DNA of 55,758 bases, the filler included, from Platydemus manokwari (Eukaryota), in NCBI GenBank assembly GCA_037951405.1. It is 5 parts of 5 records of this genome, joined end to end, with 100 filler letters (N's around TTAATTAATTAA, not from the genome) between each part and the next. Parts side by side here need not be neighbours in the genome. Positions count along the whole stretch, not along the records: positions 36,154 to 46,251 come from JBBMOY011169767.1; 4 more parts are not named here. One strand, 5' to 3'. The translations under genes and the position numbers were made by a program. A model generated the notes under the pieces. It did not search any database, was not told the DNA's origin, and was given only the letters and a program-made list of their open reading frames with translations. This document shows, one piece after another, positions 36,154 through 46,423 of this stretch. Every line of letters starts with the position of its first letter. Position 1 is the first letter of the stretch.

Positions 36154-36448
36154 TGGATGTCAAAATGGCCAATTTTGAAGCGTTTAAACCACTCGAAACA
36201 TTGTGTTTTCGCAAGAGCATGTTTGCCATAGAATTTCACGAGTAAACAATGACTTTCAGCTGCAGTTTTCTTTGCAAAAAAGTGGCTCAGCAAGACTTGA
36301 TGCGTATAAACAAATCAAACAATGTTGACTGGTTTTGATAGCTTATAAATAGAGCTTCAAAATGACGTGTATGTTAACGATTTGCTACAGCACACACACA
36401 AGTGTTTACATCTGCTGTCAAATTCTGGTTATTAAGTTATAGATCCAA
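36154..36448 (-). mobile_element. mariner copy 2, 5' end with Mos1-like transposase N-terminus
   Basis: KKTAAESHCLLVKFYGKHALAKTQCFEWFKRFKIGHFD resembles the Mos1 HTH (KKTAAESHRML...WFQRFKSGDFD). The terminus ends at 36448, followed by TA. Confidence 0.9.
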
Positions 36449-37240
36449 TACGTAAAATTACATTTCAAAGAAAATTTGTTATTTTAGATAAATTGTATAA
36501 AAATGATCCATCTTCATTTTTATTTATAAAGATTTCTAGGAATTCAGGATATACGAAGCAATTTTAACCTAATCCTGTAAGGCGCTGTTATGACCTTCAA
36601 TAAAGCATATAAATGATTGATTTATAGCTAAATATCACATATTAAATATAAATTAATATTGAAAATGTTAATTATATCTTTGTATTACAAGTTTTGCAAC
36701 TAGGGTTGTCACACTTCAGCTTTGGAATTGAAATAAGAAGAAATCTTGACAACGCTAAATTTTGTATAATAATTAATGTTTAAATATTTACTTTTAATTT
36801 TACAATTTTTTTTACCAATTTGTAATATTCGATTTTTTTGAGCAGTTCAATTGATCGCTCAATTTTGAAGATGTTGAATAGAAAGAAAACAGAAATGACA
36901 AATCAAATTCATATTCTGATCAAAACATTTTCATAATGTGTTATGGTTTATAAATTTATGATTATGAAATTATGAATCGATTTAGTGATCACTTGACACA
37001 TAATTTCGTAATTGTTAAAAAATCATTTTTCAATCTTTAAAAAGTGTCATCGCGACTTTTAAATAATTTAAATGTCTTTTAATTTGGTCCATTTCCATTT
37101 AAATCGAAAGTTTAAAGTTCTGTTTTGTATAACATTTAATTTCAAATACCTAAACCGTTTATCATGTGCTTGAATTAAAACTTAATATTTATTTAAATAA
37201 ACTTTATAAATTTTTGCAAAACATAGAAAAACATAAAAAG

Positions 37241-37309
37241 AAATTGTTATATGGTCTATTTTACCAAATACAATAACAACAAAACTTCACTCTGTAAAAA
37301 TATATTTAA
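37241..37309 (+). CDS. Micro-exon gene, candidate exon A (69 nt, phase 1-1)
   Basis: Weak acceptor aaaaag, donor gtatat; (x)IVIWSILPNTITTKLHSVKIYL; 66-nt intron to exon B. Confidence 0.3.
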
Positions 37310-37375
37310 GTATATGAGGTCATTGATATTTTTCATTGAGATTGTTTATATTTTATTTATAAAAATTCATTTCAG

Positions 37376-37444
37376 GAAAAATTAAATTTTACAATCGAAA
37401 TGTTGAAGAAGAAGCAAAGCGAGTATGCAAGGAAATTTGCTCAG
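37376..37444 (+). CDS. Micro-exon gene, exon B (69 nt, phase 1-1)
   Basis: catttcag / CAG-gtaatg; (x)KIKFYNRNVEEEAKRVCKEICS. Confidence 0.65.
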
Positions 37445-38386
37445 GTAATGAATATTTTCAATTCGATCTGAGTATTGCGAGAGTCTGATTTGGGAGGAAC
37501 TGATAATTCTTCTGTAAAATTAACACGATTGTATGTGCTATAGTTGTCCAGTTGTAAAATACTTTGGTTATCAATCACAGTATTCCCATATCATTGATTT
37601 TAAGCTAAATAAATTATTATCCAATCATTGATCAGTTATAATAATGTAGATTATTTTAATTAAATTTAATTTTTTCATTTCCTTACAAGTAAATAAATGT
37701 TTGCTGTAGCGAATTCATTAATTTGACTTTGGAAATTTGTCAATTGAAGCTATCTCATAAAATAAAATCAATTTAACAACACGTGGAAAACATTTTACCA
37801 GTTTTATACATTTTATTAACCTATTTAACATTGACAATTCGGCAGGAAAGATCAAAATCAGAATCTCTCATAGGTTTTTGGAGGAGAATGTTGTAAATGA
37901 AAGAAATTGTGATACAGATTATAACTATGATAAATTGATGGTTGAATATTTAGAAAAAATATTGATATTATTATTTCTCTATTTTTAGTGGAGTCTGCAC
38001 AACTGTGTTGTTTAATATTTACGCATTTCAAATTTGCAATTAACAATAACCTGTACTGAAAAATAATTTCGTTAATTATAAAATCAATTAAAAATTTCTT
38101 TAATCTGGTCTAAATGATGTTACTAATGGTGTCAGTGTAGTTTTTAGGCCATAATTAATGATATGATGCAAACATATTCTCTCACAATATCTTAAACGTC
38201 TATCAAAATATATTGTTAGATATTTATGAATCTTATCCGGTCGACAAAAATATTAACATAAAATAATATTTTGATGATTGATGTTTGAAATTTATATTTA
38301 AATCATTAATTATTTGAATATTATATTTAAATATCTCTCATATTGATATTTAATAAAGATATTTAAGAAATCGTTTTTCATTTTAG

Positions 38387-38491
38387 AACAAATGCCAAAT
38401 ATTTTTTCAAGCACCGTTATTTCGAATTTAAGAGTTCAAAGAAATTACCAAGATAATAAATCAACAAATGGCAATAATAATACTCAAATTG
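38387..38491 (+). CDS. Micro-exon gene, exon C (105 nt; extracellular stalk with N-glycosylation sequons NKS and NNT; internal ATG at 38392)
   Basis: cattttag / G-gtcatt; (E)QMPNIFSSTVISNLRVQRNYQDNKSTNGNNNTQI. Confidence 0.65.
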
Positions 38492-38497
38492 GTCATT

Positions 38498-38499
<2 letters not shown>

Positions 38500-38560
<61 letters not shown>
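38500..38560 (+). repeat. (ATT)n microsatellite in the 100-nt intron before the TM exon
   Basis: About 20 ATT units. Confidence 0.95.
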
Positions 38561-38561
<1 letters not shown>

Positions 38562-38591
38562 ATTTGTAAAAAAATAATCTTTTCAATTCAG

Positions 38592-38642
38592 CTGTACCAA
38601 TAGTCTGTTTCATTTTTGGCCTTTTAATTGGTTATATTCCGA
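38592..38642 (+). CDS. Micro-exon gene, exon D (51 nt; transmembrane helix)
   Basis: caattcag / A-gtaaga; (A)VPIVCFIFGLLIGYIP, uncharged and hydrophobic. Confidence 0.75.
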
Positions 38643-39635
38643 GTAAGATATTTTGAAAATTATTTATTTAGTGTAAAGCATAACATTAATTATTTAATTT
38701 GCACATGAAGACAACATTATTAAAATGACGATTTTGCAAGTTCAACACTATGACTCATTATATGTATTTAATCTATAGAGAAAGCGCTGTTTTAGATCAT
38801 GATAATACTATCGAAAAATTGTAAAAATGCAATAGAATGCGATATTTAATATATAGATTTTGACAGAGTTTATTGACATAGGTTGATGTCAAGGATTCAT
38901 GATCTGAATATGATTTTAAAAATAATCTTTCGTCATATCAACTGCTGAACAATATTTTAACATTTGAAAATAAAATTCTCAGAGAGATTGAAATATTGCT
39001 CGTTTTATTCTATTATTTATATATATTCTTTCTTAGAACTATCTTATTTGATATTTTGAATCAGCTTTCTAGTTGCCTGTTTTGGCAGAATTAAGAAACA
39101 ATAGCTTCATATAGTGGAGACAGATAAAATAATCTTAATGAAATTGAATATAATTGTCTCGGTTAAAATTGTGAAAAAGATGTTTATTATAATTAAATCT
39201 TTTGAAATCCATGTTTCTTCAATTGATGTAAAGCTTCATGATTTATTTCGAATTTGTAATTACAACCTAATTGAAGCAAACAATTATATTGTCACTCCAG
39301 ACAGAAAGCGATAAGTTTTGTGTCACTCATGTAAATACCTATTGTTTGAATATTATGGAAAAAAAGGCTGCGTGTGGTCAGAAAAGATTTAAATTATCTA
39401 TTCTAGGATTTAAATTGAAAACGATATCGCTTGAATAAATGATTAATTATAAGTGAAAATTCAAAGTTAGAAGTTTTTATTATATTATCATATGACGTAC
39501 GTAATGTTGGAATCTTGGTTAAATATTTATAAATACTAAAATTTATTTAATAATCTGATTAAATTGAAACTTTGTTTGATAAATATTTTTGTTCTAGTCT
39601 ATTAAATTGAATAAGAAAGTTATTTTCTATTTCAG

Positions 39636-39665
39636 CTATCATCAAGAAATGTAAGAAGAACAAAA
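39636..39665 (+). CDS. Micro-exon gene, exon E (30 nt, or 15 nt via gtaaga at 39651; basic stop-transfer)
   Basis: ctatttcag / gtatat; (T)IIKKCKKNK. Both donors keep phase 1. Confidence 0.7.
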
Positions 39666-40139
39666 GTATATTTTGATTTTTTAAAATTGGACTTTACCTA
39701 TATTATTAATGTATTCGTTCAACAAAAAAGTAAAAATAACTTGTTTCAGGAAGACAAAAATATATAAACATGTTATAACAATGAAATCGTTTTCTTGACA
39801 TCATAACTTTGATGACATGCATATTAATTGTCATATGTACACCACATCTCTTGTAATATGCATCTTTCATTTGATACAAGCTAGATTTTTAATTACCACT
39901 CCTTATTGCATAATAATTCATGATCTTGTGAAATACCAGTTTTACTGATTCAATGTTGTAAGCCGCTTCTTTTTGACAAAGCACATCCTGCAATCTAATT
40001 GGGAATTAACACACAAAATTATGTTTAAATAAAATTATTTCAACAATTTATTGTAAAATAATGGGTTACAGAATATGTTCAATTCAATTTTTATAAATTA
40101 TATTTATCATTTTCAAACTCACAGAGACATTGTTTTAAG

Positions 40140-40220
40140 GGAGAGGTCATAATGTTGTACAAACTATGCAAAATAATGACGAAGAAGCGGAGCTATTAAC
40201 AAATACAATAAATATAAAAG
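40140..40220 (+). CDS. Micro-exon gene, exon F (81 nt)
   Basis: gttttaag / AAG-gtaaaa; (R)RGHNVVQTMQNNDEEAELLTNTINIK. Confidence 0.6.
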
Positions 40221-40711
40221 GTAAAAAATATTTAAAAATATAAATGTTCTATCATAATACAAATAAATAATAATCCAAATAAGAATGATGATCACTATTC
40301 ATAATTTCTTGAAGATAAATGAGTCGAAAATACAATTTAGTCTATACCAAAATACATGTCTTTACAGATCGTGAAAGATGATTATAGTCCCACAATAAAA
40401 ACGAGAAAGTAATCTGCTATTCTATTTAAATCATGATAAAATGGCCAAACTTATCTGACTCGAAAAGATTTATTATTCTATACAATATACAAGATCGTCT
40501 CATGGTATTATTACTACCACATTATTACTACTGGAATGAATATTTTCACAATGTGTACTCTCATGATTTGTACTGGTTTCATTCTTTCTGAATCGTCGTA
40601 AAAATATCCATTACTTTGAGATACAAAAATTGTGCTTCTCTAATCTTAATCTTAATTTTTTAAAAATATATCCATTTCAAAAGAAATATTTTATTCATTA
40701 TTAAAATTTAG

Positions 40712-40753
40712 AAACCGACAATGCAAGAGAGAAAAGATTTGAGAGTATTTCAA
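40712..40753 (+). CDS. Micro-exon gene, exon G (42 nt)
   Basis: aaatttag / gtaaag; (E)TDNAREKRFESIS. Confidence 0.65.
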
Positions 40754-40873
40754 GTAAAGATTTTTAAAAAGAAGAGTGCAGATTTTAAAACAGCATTTAA
40801 TAAATATGGATATGATTTATTATTTTTAAATAATCATATTTTAAATTTATTTTAATTGTTGATTTATTAATAG

Positions 40874-40912
40874 GTTCGATAAATTGTGTAAACAGATTTG
40901 AAATCATAAAAG
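40874..40912 (+). CDS. Micro-exon gene, exon H (39 nt)
   Basis: ttaatag / AAG-gtaatg; (S)SINCVNRFEIIK. Confidence 0.7.
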
Positions 40913-41237
40913 GTAATGTTTATTCATTGTTTGAATGAATTTGCAATTTGGGTCGGTTTAAAAATAAATAGTGAAATATGGACGAATTCAAGTACATCAT
41001 TGATTAGAGTATTTAGGAGGGTTTACAGTTCCGGATTATAATTCTAATCAACTACCCTCACTGTATTAACGTTTAGTTTGATAATAAATATTGTCATAAT
41101 AATAATTTTAAATTGAATATTTAACGTGAAGTGGTAATAAATTTTATTTAATCTTTTATCAATATCAAGGGACAGATGAAAACGTCTATCTTAGCTTCAT
41201 ATTGTTATGACTTATGTGTGTAATTTATGTTTTTTAG

Positions 41238-41288
41238 AGATAACTGAACTAATAATTAATCCAAAATGGGATTCACTGGGATTGAAAA
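41238..41288 (+). CDS. Micro-exon gene, exon I (51 nt)
   Basis: gttttttag / gtaagt (consensus donor); (E)ITELIINPKWDSLGLK. Confidence 0.7.
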
Positions 41289-42432
41289 GTAAGTACAATA
41301 TTTTTGCAGAATTGTTTATTAGTATTAAATTATAATTATGAATTTACTTTATTTTTTAAATATTCCTTTGACCGAAGTACATGAATTTTCACTGAGAAAC
41401 ACTAACTTTGTAAACTAAATATTATATCGATAGAATGACGATAAAAGTAGGCTATTCGAGATTTTTGAATATGGCAATCGCGTTAAATATGGGTGTTGCA
41501 AATGAAATGAAAGTTGTTTTAAACTATCATTTTTAAAGAAATCAAAGAGTTTTAACATCAAAAATAATGACACTCCAATAAATTATGTACTTTTCTTAAT
41601 TTTTCACAACATCTTTCAATATTCATACCAGTGTTTTGATTTCATTTTAGTGCTATCTTGACAGTCTTTGCGGTGTGTGGTCTAGTATTGTCTTGAAGGA
41701 GTGAAACCCATCAACCGAAGCGACTTCAAATCACAAATCATATTTTCAACTATTACTCTGCATACCCGAAAGTCATATTTTCTCAGAGGTTCTCTAACTT
41801 AGGCCTCGTACATCTCGATTAGTGTTTAAGAACAAAAAGTGTCGTTGAGATCCAAATTATCATGTCCCTTTCATACACGCACAATTATCTCGGGAATCCT
41901 CACTCGCTTTTGATCTCGCATTAAGGTAAAATAAGGTGTCAAAAATTCGTATTTGTGTCTACTTTACAATCAATTTTACGATTATCAAAAAGACAAAAAT
42001 AATTTAAGTAAAAACAATTACTTAAAACATGCATAACATAAGCTTTTTAATAGTATATAACACTTCGCCAAACATCAAAAATTATTCTTGGAATTAATAG
42101 TTTTATGAGCTGTAAAAGCTAAAGCAACGATAGAATTGATTGAATAAATTAATAAAACTAACTAGGACTAACTAGCTGGTATTAATTCTCTATATAATCG
42201 TATCTAAGCTTCTCCGAAATTGAACTTATTTTTTTTAATTACATCAATTTCTATAGAAATATTGAATTTATTAACAAAATTTAATAAACAGTGAGGTAAA
42301 AAAATGAAAATCTCAAGGTATTTCAAATAAAGATTTCCAAAAATAAAGTGCAGATTTTTCTAACACCATTTGATAAATATGTATATTATTTGATATTTTT
42401 AAAGAAAATTTTAAAAATTGATTTATAAATAG

Positions 42433-42471
42433 GTTCGACAGAATATGTAGACAGATCCAAACTTTTACAAG
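42433..42471 (+). CDS. Micro-exon gene, exon J (39 nt, paralogue of H)
   Basis: aaatag / AAG-gtgatt; (S)STEYVDRSKLLQ. Confidence 0.65.
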
Positions 42472-42886
42472 GTGATTATTGTTCATTTTTGTTTGATAAA
42501 ATAAAATTATAATGTATTGCGGTATAAAGATACAGACCTGAGGATGTAGTAGATTAAAATGGTTACCTATTCAAATACACTATTCATTGAAATATTTGAA
42601 GTTGTATTTTAAGTTCTCTAAGACACTGATAAGTATCATGATTTATTATAAGTATTATAAGAAAAAAAGATGATAAATAATTTTAGATATACTCAGTTTG
42701 GAAATTATATTAATTAGCGCGGGACATAAACTGTATTGGATTTTGTTTATTTAATAGTAGTGAAAATTCAATGTTTGGCAGTTTATTTTTTATTTTTATA
42801 CTATTTTAAATACTATTATACTATGATAAATAAATATTTTTATTCTAAAATATTATATTGACTAAGAAAGTTATTTTGTAATTTAG

Positions 42887-42925
42887 CTATCACCCGGTCT
42901 TACAAAAAATGTAACAAGATCAAAA
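42887..42925 (+). CDS. Micro-exon gene, exon K (39 nt, paralogue of E with a 9-nt in-frame indel)
   Basis: aatttag / gtatat; (A)ITRSYKKCNKIK. Flanks resemble 39595-39720. Confidence 0.6.
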
Positions 42926-43329
42926 GTATATTTTTATTTTATTTAAATGGTCATTTAACTTATTTAATTCTATTTATTCCATTCTAAAATTTATTAATTC
43001 AAATAACGTGCAAAATACCAAGCTTATTTCATGTATTTTTATATTATGTAAGAAAAATATGTTATTGTTTTCTTCATATAACATCTTTGGTGTTATATTT
43101 ATTTAAATAATTTAAGATCTTGCAAATTTTGGTGGAATTAATTTTCTTAAACCTATCCTCGGTTTGTATTTTCATTGAAATTGTGTAATAATTTAAAATC
43201 ATTTCATTGAGAGACATTGATTTCGATTCTTATAATATTTTTTTAGATTTTTAAATACTAAAAGAAATTTGATGAATTTTTCTGAAATTTGATGGACTTT
43301 CTAAGAAAATTTCCACACTAGGTTTGAAT

Positions 43330-44210
43330 GAAATCAGATTCTTACCACTTTTGTTATTAATCTACAATTTTATAACCCGATATTGATTTATCTTCATCTT
43401 ATATTGAATCCAACAGGTAAGGTTGGAATTCCTCTAATTTCTTATTTCATTGTTGTATTTTGTTACTTTGAAATTTTTAGAGTTTAACGTTTTATTTTCA
43501 AATTCCAGAGAATTATCAAAAAATCTCATTATGAAATTCTTATAATATTATTTCAAAAGTAGGTCCTCCGTTTCTCTGTCTATTTTAAAGGTTTACCATT
43601 ATTCCGTTGATTAAGCTGCACATGTCTTTTGTTACAATTCTGCAAAATTATTTGTCCTCAACTACTCAAGCATTGATTCTGCTCACATCTTCATGAATAC
43701 ATTTAAAATAATCATCGTCTGATTTCTGGTACAAATATAATAGATTCTTGAATATATATCCTAATAATCTCTATTAATTCTCTGCAAACATTTTGAGGAA
43801 TTTTTCTTCCTAATCTTCTATATAGCTTCTCTATTCATCTACTGCCTCTTCATTCTTTCGCAAATATTCTTTTTAATTTCTCTCCATCATCCAAATCTAC
43901 CACAGCTATTACTTTTTCACAGATATTATTATTTTCTATTTTCATAATAGATTTTTCTTTATATTTGACATCAATTACCTGCTTCGATGAGTGTATCCCT
44001 GAGTTGCAATTAAATTATTCTAATTGTATTTTACTTCTTGTATCTCTCTCTCTTATTTTGATTCTTCTACAGTTTCATCATATATTTGTTTTACACTTCT
44101 TATTCCGAGAGAATATTGTTTGTATTATTATTGTTCCTGTGATTACTAAATGTTCACTGGGTTCCATCTTGCAATATATGACTGTTTATCATTTTACTCG
44201 ATTCAAAAAA
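43330..44210 (-). mobile_element. Highly decayed Gypsy-like pol remnant, antisense in intron K-L
   Basis: Purine-rich minus strand with broken reading frames loosely resembling the RNaseH-integrase junction (...IFSR, VPEIRR, GGP). Many stops. Confidence 0.35.
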
Positions 44211-44558
44211 TGAGGATATAATTCTTTTTATTTTTCTTCTCATGTTGTCTTGATAATTAAAGACTTAATTCCTTAATTTTCGGAAAAATTGTGGAATTTA
44301 TATAATTAATTGAATAAAGTATTAATATAACAAACTAGTTTATCCAATCTTAATTAAAAACATTTATAAAAATTTTTAATTTAATAATAAATTTATTTAA
44401 CGACGAAACAAAGAAAAAATTAGAATATATGTATCAAGTAAAGATTTTTAAAAATAAAATTGGGGATTTTCTAAGCAGCATTTATTAAACTTGTGGAGAA
44501 TTTGTTATTTTTAAATAACCATATTTTAAATTCGTTTTAAATATTGATTTAATAACAG

Positions 44559-44597
44559 GATTCACAGAACCTACGAGAGAAACTCTACCTTCAGAAG
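44559..44597 (+). CDS. Micro-exon gene, exon L (39 nt, paralogue of H/J)
   Basis: ataacag / AAG-gtgata; (R)FTEPTRETLPSE. Confidence 0.65.
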
Positions 44598-44768
44598 GTG
44601 ATATTTATTCATTGTATTTTGATTAAATAAATTTGCAAGTTACTTCGGTATAAAGGCCTATCAAACACTTATGAGGACTATTAGGTTCTCGTTAGTTAAC
44701 AAAATATGATGATAAAGTTTCGATCATGAAAAAAAAATCTACATATAAAAAGAAATATTACATTTCAG

Positions 44769-44810
44769 ACGTCGTCAGTAGAGGTTGGTATGAACGTTTA
44801 AAGAATAACA
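44769..44810 (+). CDS. Micro-exon gene, exon M (42 nt)
   Basis: catttcag / gtaaaa; (D)VVSRGWYERLKNN. Confidence 0.6.
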
Positions 44811-45112
44811 GTAAAAATTGTAACGAATAAATAGTTTTTATCAAAATTGCTTTGAGTAAAAATCTTACAAACATAATTATATACACAGCTTTAATTTTAG
44901 AAATGGACATAATATTTTGATAATATTTTTTAAATTTCCTTCATTGAAATATATTATGTATTGAAAATATATATTATTGTGAAAATACTTTCAAATTGAA
45001 ATTTTAAGGCGTCGTGACAATAAATTTATAAAAATATAAACGAATTTTATAAAAATTTCTAAATTAAGCCTCATATTGCTAGTAATCATGTCTATAATTT
45101 TTGTTTTGTTAG

Positions 45113-45201
45113 AGAGCCATAAACCAAAAGGAAATCAACGTTGTGTATCACTACCATTGAAAGGTTGCAAAGTGGATAGCAGATATTTCCTTGATGCTTA
45201 G
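45113..45201 (+). CDS. Micro-exon gene, terminal exon N (paralogue of I, reads through to TAG)
   Basis: ttttgttag; (K)SHKPKGNQRCVSLPLKGCKVDSRYFLDA*; AATAAA at 45271-45276. Confidence 0.65.
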
Positions 45202-46060
45202 AATATAAATATTGATTCACTTTAATTTTAAATATTACTTTTATGAAAATGCATCAATTTTGAAAAAACCAATAAATTTGTAAAATATATATTTTTGCAA
45301 TTCAAAAGAAATTCAATCAAATTTATACTGCCTTCTCAGTTTGCATTAATTAAATTTAAAATAATTTTAAAATCCTGTGTATTGTATTGAAAATACATAA
45401 AATCTTCAAAAATTTAATATTAAATTAAGTATTCATTTGTGATGAATAAAAAGTTTATTAACAATGAAAGGCTTATATTGTCATTCAATAAAAAATAATT
45501 TTTAGAATAGGTTATAAAGATAATTCTTATGCAGAAGTTTATTTAATGTAATATGTACAATGATTTAAAATATTAAACAGCCTACTGAGAAAATAGATCT
45601 TTAAATATTGTGAATATATCATCTCTGTTCATTCGTCTTTTAAATTTCTAGTCCACACTAAAATAATATTAATATAAGCAATCTCGTCTTTTTAGATAAG
45701 GAATACCAACCGTTTAATCATAATGTTTTAAAGAATAACTGGAATACTCCCGAAAAACTAATTTAAAACAACATTGAAAATAAAGTCATTGTCAGTGGTA
45801 GCTACTTCATTCAAATTTTGAAATTAGTGAGAATGATAATTTAAATGATTTCAGGAAATATGTATTTATTATTATTTAAATTTATTATTATTGAATTAAT
45901 ATATTTTAATGAAAATATAAAATAAAAATCCTGAAAATCTACTTTAAATTGCCTCTAGCTTCATTGTTCAATTATTCACAGAGATCTATATTTTCATGAA
46001 AACTTGCATTTTGCTATAAAACACTTTATCTACTGAAATTTAGTAATTTTTATCCATATA

Positions 46061-46423
46061 TTGGGTCTATAACTTAATAACCGGTATTTGAACCCAGATG
46101 TAAACACTTGTGTGTGTGCTGTCGCAAATCATTAACATACACGTCATTTTGAAGCTTTATTCATAAGCTATCACAATCAGTCAACATTGTTTGATTTGTT
46201 TATACGCATCATATTTGTTTTAATTATGGAACATTTTGAAAATTGGCGAAANNNNNNNNNNNNNNNNNNNNNNNNNNNNNNNNNNNNNNNNNNNNTTAAT
46301 TAATTAANNNNNNNNNNNNNNNNNNNNNNNNNNNNNNNNNNNNNNNNNNNNTAAGATCTTCAATTTAATATTTAAAAATGAAAAGCCAATTTAAAAAAGG
46401 CCATTATTTTTGCACCAACCTAA
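46061..46423 (+). mobile_element. mariner copy 3 (both ends; interior in gap)
   Basis: TA-TTGGGTCTATAACTTAATAACCGG ... GGCCATTATTTTTGCACCAACCTAA-TA. The 5' UTR matches copies 1 and 2; ATG near 46226. Confidence 0.85.
46252..46351. other. Assembly spacer (44N-TTAATTAATTAA-44N)
   Basis: Same fixed spacer. Confidence 0.95.

What the first reader, a model, noticed from the sequence alone, without database searches (positions are those of the whole stretch)
39590..45170. The tail was built by tandem duplication of exon-plus-intron cassettes; possible alternative tails
Seen: three repeat families that include intron flanks. E (39595-39720) matches K (42845-42985). The G/H cassette occurs three times (40670-40960, 42240-42530, 44365-44655). 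I (41190-41290) matches N (45065-45165). The order is E-F-G-H-I / G'-J / K-G''-L-M-N. Inference: K duplicates the juxtamembrane KKC exon, so TM exon D could splice to E or to K and give two different tails from one ectodomain.
Basis: partly seen in the sequence, partly recalled or inferred. Interest (0 to 1): 0.75.

Follow-up and report, generated by a model that had tools for sequence, protein, structure and literature searches.

The report
Duplicated mini-exon cassettes in a gene tail
A 2-kb block of tiny exon-like segments with their intron flanks was copied in tandem, and four of the seven copied segments still look usable, but no RNA data could show whether they give alternative protein tails.

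Summary
All three repeat families are real, lie in the same order and on the same strand, and score far above chance: 119-195 bits against at most 82 bits in 40 surrogate sequences. The layout is one full unit (39442-41423: E, F, G, H, I), a partial middle unit (42208-42688: G', H') and a third unit (42749-45293: K, G'', H'', N). Unrelated DNA lies between and inside the units.

The putative exons are 30-105 nt. All are multiples of three in phase 1-1 and are bounded by AG and GT. They are open in one shared frame, while the other two frames hold 15 and 16 stops.

Of seven duplicated exons, four remain intact (H', K, H'', N). Three are dead or unrecognisable (G', G'', the F copy). Neutral decay would rarely leave four intact (P about 0.0003-0.02).

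The H'' core is at chance identity to H (14/39), while its flanks are 84% identical.

So tandem duplication of exon-plus-intron cassettes is supported. "Two different tails" is untested, because no RNA run was found. As stated it is also unlikely: unit 1 has no spliced stop of its own, so both forms would end in unit 3. No homologue or gene identity was found. This is an ordinary kind of event with one unusual conservation pattern.

The parts
37376..37444 (+). Putative exon B, 69 nt, phase 1-1, open. Context upstream of the finding.
   Evidence: AG/GT-bounded open segment found in the objective scan. No Pfam family.
38387..38491 (+). Putative exon C, 105 nt, phase 1-1, rich in Ser/Thr/Asn, stalk-like.
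   Evidence: Translation. The only hit in 1.84 billion representatives was spurious.
38592..38642 (+). Putative exon D, 51 nt. It encodes a 16-residue hydrophobic stretch (membrane-span-like) that continues into E.
   Evidence: AG acceptor, GTAAGA donor.
39442..41423 (+). Duplication unit 1 (complete): E, F, G, H, I with their flanks.
39636..39665 (+). Exon E, 30 nt: basic juxtamembrane segment with the KKC motif.
   Evidence: 26/30 identical to K.
40140..40220 (+). Exon F, 81 nt, phase 1-1.
   Evidence: Unit 3 holds only a weak flank remnant at 43472-43511 (76% over 42 nt, E 0.003).
40712..40753 (+). Exon G, 42 nt, phase 1-1. The only intact copy of its family.
40874..40912 (+). Exon H, 39 nt, phase 1-1.
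41238..41288 (+). Exon I, 51 nt, phase 1-1, consensus donor GTAAGT, so an internal exon.
41560..41960 (-). G+C-richer insert (35%) between unit 1 and unit 2. Probably a decayed Tc1/mariner-type transposase fragment.
   Evidence: Composition. A DNTRPHTA-like motif in the minus-strand translation of 41645-41710, recognised from memory only. Pfam and PDB searches of the pieces found nothing. X1 depth spikes at both edges.
42208..42688 (+). Duplication unit 2 (partial): G' and H' only.
42285..42326 (+). G', a dead copy of G: AG changed to AA, GT changed to AT, in-frame stop.
   Evidence: Alignment A1, coordinates, sequence.
42433..42471 (+).
42749..45293 (+). Duplication unit 3: K, decayed F and G copies, H'', an extra 265-nt segment holding M, and N.
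42887..42925 (+). Exon K, 39 nt: a copy of E with a 9-nt in-frame insertion. It carries a C/A polymorphism at 42915 (Asn/Lys).
44397..44437 (+). G'', a dead copy of G: acceptor lost, 41 nt (frame broken), immediate stop in phase 1.
44559..44597 (+).
44769..44830 (+). M: a 15-nt micro-exon if the weak donor at 44784 is used, otherwise an alternative last coding exon that reads in phase 1 to a stop at 44828-44830. It has no counterpart in unit 1.
   Evidence: Sequence, open frame 44696-44827, no homology to unit 1. Inferred only.
45113..45201 (+). Exon N, a 51-nt copy of I. Its donor is weak (GTTGCA, with a 3-nt deletion beside it). Read-through reaches a stop at 45199-45201, and AATAAA lies at 45271-45276. 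Probably the last coding exon.

Best explanation
The region is the 3' part of a gene on the + strand, made of very small exons that all start and end in phase 1. It appears to encode a single-pass membrane protein: a stalk-like exon C, a hydrophobic exon D, then the basic exon E. A block of about 2 kb carrying five tail exons with their introns (E, F, G, H, I) was duplicated in tandem. One full copy remains, plus a middle copy of which only G'-H' is left, and a third copy (K to N). Transposon debris and other DNA were inserted later. Three duplicated exons decayed (both G copies and the F copy). Four were kept splice-competent and open (H', K, H'', N), which indicates selection on them as coding cassettes. 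Every exon length is a multiple of three in the same phase, so any subset can be included without breaking the frame. The duplication therefore lengthened the tail or supplied optional cassettes. The conserved intron flanks are most simply the splicing signals that such tiny exons need. Shown: the duplication, its layout, the state of each copy and the conservation pattern. Inferred: that these are transcribed exons, that the protein spans a membrane, and how the cassettes are used.
For: Duplication: with a surrogate control. It is also present in a second haplotype assembly. Exon-likeness: twelve segments all have lengths divisible by three and AG/GT borders; no stops in the common frame against 15 and 16 in the other two; G is highest at codon position 1 and A+T highest at position 3; G+C is 31.6% in exons against 24.0% in introns. 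Strand bias of exon-like segments: 18 on the + strand, 3 on the - strand, 10 +/- 4 in surrogates. Lengths are kept exactly among copies (39/39/39 and 51/51; E/K differ by 9), while the flanks carry about one indel per 42 nt. Retention: four of seven duplicated exons are intact, against 0.4-1.2 expected under neutral decay, P 3e-4 to 0.02. Cassette behaviour: the H'' core is 14/39 identical to H while the 50-nt flanks are 84/100 identical (Fisher 1.4e-7; sharp trough). That is below the 71% of the rest of the block (binomial 6e-6). Fifteen changes are unique to H'', seven of them A/T to G/C against the genome's bias, and they hit codon positions 1 and 2 as often as position 3.
Against: There is no transcript evidence. 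The single run search found only one DNA-like run, and it was made with an 8-kb query in which exons this small hold too few 31-letter words to flag an RNA run. No homologue was found: Pfam was blank for B and C, and exon C found only a spurious repeat protein among 1.84 billion representatives. In 75% A+T DNA, T-rich runs read as hydrophobic and A-rich runs as Lys/Asn, so the membrane-span-plus-basic pattern can arise by composition alone. The exons were picked by eye for being open, which inflates the frame statistics. No start codon or signal-peptide exon was found inside the piece. Contigs from other loci match the cassette flanks at 90-95%, which could mean a dispersed repeat.
Confidence: 0.6

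Rival explanations
1. The duplication created two alternative tails, with exon D spliced either to E or to K, as mutually exclusive blocks.
For: K is a frame-preserving copy of E with a near-identical acceptor flank (41/50 identical upstream, 26/30 in the exon). All exons are phase 1-1, so skipping E to H' keeps the frame. Short, frame-preserving exons with conserved flanks are typical of regulated alternative exons (PMC7706725). Tandem duplication that includes intron flanks is the proposed origin of mutually exclusive exons (PMC6071210, PMC9013439).
Against: I has a consensus donor, and no stop is reachable by splicing inside unit 1, so the two forms would be nested (long and short) with one shared C-terminus. 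Including both blocks does not break the frame, so nothing enforces exclusivity. The D-intron shows no complementarity to the E or K flanks beyond shuffles (z -1.0 and -0.05). The cassettes have no conserved RNA structure. No RNA data are available.
Confidence: 0.15
2. This is a non-coding segmental duplication in intergenic or intronic DNA. The exons are chance AG-to-GT intervals that a reader can always find in A+T-rich sequence.
For: There is no homologue, no RNA evidence and no visible start. Surrogate sequences also yield about 10 exon-like segments. Exon cores are not better conserved than flanks, except in E/K.
Against: Four of seven copies keep AG, GT, length and an open frame after about 30% divergence. 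A 30-nt trough of chance-level identity ends exactly at the AG and GT of H'', which neutral DNA does not explain. The strand asymmetry is 18 to 3. G+C is raised in the cores.
Confidence: 0.17
3. The cassettes are copies of a dispersed repeat, such as a small non-autonomous transposon, that landed here three times. They are not products of local duplication.
For: Of 133 X1 contigs laid on the stretch, 110 fit only partly. Several from other loci match cassette flanks at 90-95%, for example at 40840-40894 and 44500-44551. Depth rises over 40000-40199, 40800-40999 and 42400-42599. The piece is rich in transposon debris.
Against: Three different families occur twice in the same order and orientation (E..GH..I and K..GH''..N), which independent insertions do not give. 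No terminal inverted repeats bound the blocks. The extra copies elsewhere could equally be paralogous genes.
Confidence: 0.08

Closest known systems
Tandem exon duplication, including clusters of mutually exclusive exons (PMC9013439, PMC6071210)
   Same: Head-to-tail copies of exons together with adjacent intron sequence. The copies keep the same length and phase, and the flanking introns keep detectable similarity.
   Different: Here a multi-exon block was copied, not a single exon. The copies of H are separated by other exons. Including several copies does not break the frame. No competing RNA pairing was found. Mutual exclusivity is untested.
Dscam-type variable exon arrays of arthropods (PMC3364881, PMC1431710)
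   Same: Duplicated cassettes of fixed length whose cores differ strongly while their borders are kept.
   Different: Dscam arrays are long runs of adjacent alternatives that encode immunoglobulin half-domains of the ectodomain, chosen through docking and selector sites. Here there are three copies in a putative cytoplasmic tail, with no such sites. No sequence similarity to Dscam was tested or seen.
Regulated micro-exons and short frame-preserving alternative exons (PMC7706725)
   Same: Exons of 30-51 nt with lengths divisible by three and strongly conserved flanking intron sequence.
   Different: The known cases are defined by tissue-regulated inclusion and by conservation between species. 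Neither could be tested here. In those cases the exon itself is usually conserved as well.
Accelerated evolution of duplicated venom phospholipase A2 genes, where introns are more conserved than coding exons (reviewed in PMC7285919)
   Same: Between duplicates the non-coding flanks are much more alike than the coding core, and changes fall on all three codon positions alike.
   Different: Those are whole-gene duplicates of secreted toxins. Here it is one 39-nt cassette within a gene. Nothing suggests a toxin.

Membership tests
Tandem (block) exon duplication | Significant same-strand homology between neighbouring segments that covers exon and intron flank | tested here: met
   Observed hits score 119-182 bits against at most 82.5 bits in surrogates.
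Tandem (block) exon duplication | Copies keep exon length or phase | tested here: met
   H/H'/H'' are 39 nt each, I/N are 51 nt each, E/K are 30 and 39 nt. All are phase 1-1. G' and G'' fail.
Tandem (block) exon duplication | The segments are real exons, transcribed and spliced | not testable with these tools
   Only one run was found and it is not RNA.
Mutually exclusive exon cluster | Alternatives are adjacent in one array, with no constitutive exon between them | tested here: not met
   H, H' and H'' are separated by I and K. E and K are separated by five exon-like segments (F, G, H, I, H').
Mutually exclusive exon cluster | A mechanism that enforces one choice: frame breakage on double inclusion, or docking and selector pairing | tested here: not met
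   All lengths are divisible by three. Duplex energies are no better than shuffles. The consensus fold is weak at -9.5 kcal/mol.
Mutually exclusive exon cluster | Exactly one copy per transcript | not testable with these tools
   No RNA data.
Single-pass membrane protein | A hydrophobic span of about 20 residues followed by a basic cluster | tested here: inconclusive
   The pattern is present across D and E, but A+T-rich composition can produce it. No homologue was found.
Micro-exon-type cassette | Length of 51 nt or less, divisible by three, with conserved intron flanks | tested here: met
   for lengths. Flanks are 74-86% identical between copies. Regulated inclusion was not testable.
Dispersed repeat or small transposon | Many solitary copies genome-wide, with terminal repeats and target-site duplications | tested here: inconclusive
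   Other contigs match parts of the flanks. No terminal inverted repeats bound the blocks. A genome-wide census was not possible.

The most novel reading that the evidence does not exclude
The cassettes belong to a family, with further copies elsewhere in this genome, in which conserved intron flanks frame short hypervariable coding cores. The H'' core has been driven to chance-level identity. The cassettes would be combined freely, because all are phase 1-1, giving a diversified cytoplasmic tail of a membrane receptor. That would be a Dscam-like diversification principle applied to the signalling end of a protein.
Probability: 0.08. Interest if true: 0.7.

Novelty: new member of a known kind. 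Interest (0 to 1): 0.35.

Why it matters
If the segments are exons, this is a clean and datable example of how a block of phase-symmetric mini-exons is copied and then sorted: some copies die, some are kept, and one is remodelled far faster than its own intron flanks. It would also give an easy test of whether such duplication leads at once to alternative splicing. Without transcript data it remains an ordinary intragenic duplication in an unidentified gene.

Tried and rejected
- **RNA evidence.** The look-up of sequencing runs with an 8-kb query returned one run not on record as RNA.
- **Read laying on X1.** It gave contigs only, so no junction evidence. The listed joints have sides of 21-30 letters and were disregarded, as the tool advises.
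- **Rfam.** No family at gathering score.
- **Pfam.** Nothing on B, C, the longest open frames or the suspected transposase pieces, except HTH_48 at the left edge of the piece.
- **PDB sequence search.** The mariner-like 22-residue piece found nothing.
- **Exon C against 1.84 billion representatives.** The one hit (E 7e-4) is a repetitive 839-residue protein matched in four weak stretches, judged spurious.
- **Spliced model.** The other exons are shorter than the 30-residue minimum.
- **Metagenome scan.** A degenerate H-cassette pattern found 0 matches.
- **RNA structure.** The consensus fold of the three cassettes and the docking/selector duplex test showed no signal.
- **Copy of F in unit 3.** Only a weak flank remnant was found.
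- **Word-index protein search and contig look-ups.** Not used. Length limits make them blind to a full-length protein from such short queries, and look-ups could have fetched the masked flanks.
Full report
**Scope.** Only places 36154-46251 were used. The piece is 75% A+T. It has no Rfam family and a 20-copy ATT microsatellite. It looks like eukaryotic genomic DNA.

**1.

A sensitive self-comparison, the repeat finder and three MAFFT alignments (A1-A3) show five strong same-strand matches:

| Pair | Coordinates | Identity | E-value |
|---|---|---|---|
| E-block / K-block | 39541-39825 / 42792-43103 | 66% over 312 nt | 1e-28 |
| GH / GH' | 40634-41113 / 42208-42688 | 66% over 508 nt | 1e-47 |
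| GH / GH'' | 40664-40962 / 44352-44654 | 71% | 1e-38 |
| GH' / GH'' | 42235-42529 / 44350-44655 | 68% | 7e-34 |
| I-block / N-block | 41034-41423 / 44919-45293 | 65% over 394 nt | 9e-35 |

- The E/K match has a weak extension back to 39442/42749.
- A+T-rich DNA aligns with itself easily, so I made 40 second-order Markov surrogates. Their best off-diagonal hit averaged 52 bits, with a maximum of 82.5. The real hits score 119-182 bits.
- The families lie in the same order in two places, E..GH..I and K..GH''..N, with a third GH copy between them. This is block duplication, not three separate events.
- Contigs of the only public run that holds the stretch (X1) differ from the window by two substitutions and four small indels, so they come from another haplotype. 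They carry the same layout: one contig spans 39812-42772 and another spans 42865-44531.

**2. Anatomy**

- Unit 1 is 39442-41423. Unit 3 is 42749-45293.
- The 1.3 kb between them holds a G+C-richer insert (about 41560-41960) and then the partial unit 2 (42208-42688), which ends 60 nt before unit 3.
  - The insert's minus strand reads like a decayed Tc1/mariner transposase. I recognised the motif from memory only; Pfam and PDB searches of the pieces found nothing.
- Unit 3 is longer than unit 1 for two reasons.
  - About 1.2 kb of unrelated, strongly C+T-skewed DNA lies between K and G''.
  - A 265-nt segment (44655-44918) has no counterpart in unit 1.
- A copy of F in unit 3 is reduced to a weak flank remnant at 43472-43511.

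**3. Are the segments exons?**

Twelve segments on the + strand (B, C, D, E, F, G, H, I, H', K, H'', N; coordinates in the parts list) share these features:

- Each is bounded by AG and GT.
- Each has a length divisible by three.
- All are open when read in phase 1.

Summed over the 636 nt:

- The shared frame has no stop. The other two frames have 15 and 16.
- G is most frequent at codon position 1, and A+T at position 3.
- G+C is 31.6%, against 24.0% in the intervening DNA.

These statistics are inflated, because the segments were chosen for being open. Three tests do not depend on that choice.

- **Strand bias.** An objective scan for such segments finds 18 on the + strand, 3 on the - strand and 10 +/- 4 in surrogates.
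- **Survival of the copies.**
  - Taking the unit-1 exons as given, four of their seven copies keep AG, GT, a length divisible by three and an open frame (H', K, H'', N).
  - G' has lost both splice dinucleotides and has a stop. G'' has lost its acceptor and is 41 nt long. The F copy is unrecognisable.
  - A simulation of neutral decay at the divergence and indel rates seen in the rest of the blocks expects 0.4-1.2 intact copies. It gives P of 3e-4 to 0.02 for four or more.
- **Conservation profile.**
  - Between GH and GH'', identity is 16-19 of 20 on either side of the H exon. It falls to 5-6 of 20, which is chance level, exactly between the AG and the GT.
  - The core is 14/39 identical and the two 50-nt flanks are 84/100 identical (Fisher 1.4e-7).
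  - The core lies well below the 71% of the remaining block (binomial 6e-6).
  - Fifteen changes are unique to H''. Seven run from A/T to G/C, against the genome's bias. Changes hit codon positions 1, 2 and 3 nine, ten and six times.
  - Neutral DNA does not produce a trough bounded by splice sites. A coding cassette does, either under diversifying selection or after patch conversion from an unseen paralogue.
  - E/K behaves the opposite way: the exon is 26/30 identical, the insertion is 9 nt and in frame, and the KKC motif is kept.

I take these results together as moderate evidence, about 0.6-0.7, that this is a real gene with very small exons.

**4. What speaks against**

- **No transcript evidence.** Exons of 30-105 nt hold so few 31-letter words that an RNA run could not have reached the reporting threshold, so this blank means little.
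- **No homologue.**
  - Pfam is blank for B and C.
  - Exon C is the only exon long enough for the exhaustive search. It found one spurious repetitive protein.
The remaining exons are below the 30-residue minimum.
- **Composition.** The hydrophobic-then-basic pattern of D and E is what T-rich followed by A-rich DNA encodes anyway.
- **No start.** No start codon or signal-peptide exon is visible inside the piece. The 5' end may lie beyond the mariner copy at the left edge, which I did not look up.
- **Copies elsewhere.** Many X1 contigs from other loci match short parts of the cassette flanks at 90-95%, for example 40840-40894, which ends 21 nt into exon H. Related cassettes therefore exist elsewhere in the genome. 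I could not tell whether they are paralogous genes or a dispersed repeat.

**5. How it most likely works**

- All exons are phase 1-1, so any subset keeps the frame. The duplication either lengthened the tail or supplied optional cassettes.
- I has a consensus donor (GTAAGT), and no stop is reachable by splicing within unit 1.
- N has a poor donor. It reads through to a stop at 45199-45201, and AATAAA lies at 45271-45276.
- M (44769 onward) could end the frame earlier, at 44828-44830.
- Nothing enforces exclusivity.
  - The H copies are not adjacent to one another.
  - Double inclusion is frame-neutral.
  - The intron after D is no more complementary to the E or K flanks than shuffles are.
  - The three cassettes share no convincing RNA fold.
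- The conserved flanks are best read as the intronic splicing signals that very short exons depend on. Short, frame-preserving exons with conserved flanks are a recognised class (PMC7706725).

**6. Comparison with what is known**

- Tandem exon duplication that carries intron flanks along is common, and it is the accepted origin of mutually exclusive exons (PMC9013439, PMC6071210).
- This case fits the duplication part. It fails two tested features of a mutually exclusive cluster: adjacency and an enforcing mechanism.
- Flanks more conserved than the coding core is unusual for duplicated exons. It has a precedent in duplicated venom phospholipase genes (PMC7285919).
- I file this as a new member of a known kind, with one notable feature, the remodelled H'' core.

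**7. Steps not run**

The first metagenome scan, with an H-cassette pattern that matches all three local copies, found nothing.

**Verdict**

| Claim | Probability |
|---|---|
| Duplication is real | about 0.97 |
| The segments are exon cassettes | about 0.6-0.7 |
| D-to-K alternative splicing | about 0.15 |

- Observation: confirmed.
- Interest is modest until transcripts are seen.

Noticed in passing
36156-36493 (minus strand) and 46008-46249 (plus strand): Both ends of the piece are 5' ends of mariner-type elements in inverted orientation, pointing outward. They are 85% alike over 205 nt, with a 153-nt core at 92%. The left one encodes a Mos1-type HTH_48 domain (Pfam E 1.9e-9). The putative gene segment therefore sits between two mariner copies.
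   Followed up: partly
38500-38560: A perfect (ATT)20 microsatellite fills most of the 100-nt interval between putative exons C and D and ends about 30 nt before D's acceptor. Length changes here could affect splicing of D.
   Followed up: no
41560-41960, minus strand: A segment with 35% G+C whose minus-strand translation contains a DNTRPHTA-like motif reminiscent of Tc1/mariner transposases. Pfam and PDB searches of the short pieces found nothing. X1 depth spikes at 41400-41599 and 42000-42199 suggest a multi-copy element.
   Followed up: partly
43797-44210, plus strand: The longest open frame of the piece (138 codons) lies in a strongly C+T-skewed segment (GC skew about -0.5) between K and G''. 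No Pfam family matched on either strand. It is probably compositional or old transposon debris.
   Followed up: partly
42915 and 42397: The X1 haplotype differs from the window at 42915 (C to A, Asn to Lys in exon K, which restores the residue seen in E). It also carries 14 extra letters behind 42397 in the G'-H' intron, which restore a motif present in GH and GH''. The window allele therefore has a recent deletion there.
   Followed up: partly
40840-40894, 44500-44551, and loose ends at 40013, 41118 and 42826: Contigs of X1 from other loci match these cassette-flank stretches at 90-95% and then diverge. One does so 21 nt into exon H. Further copies of the cassettes, or of a repeat within them, exist elsewhere in the genome.
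   Followed up: no
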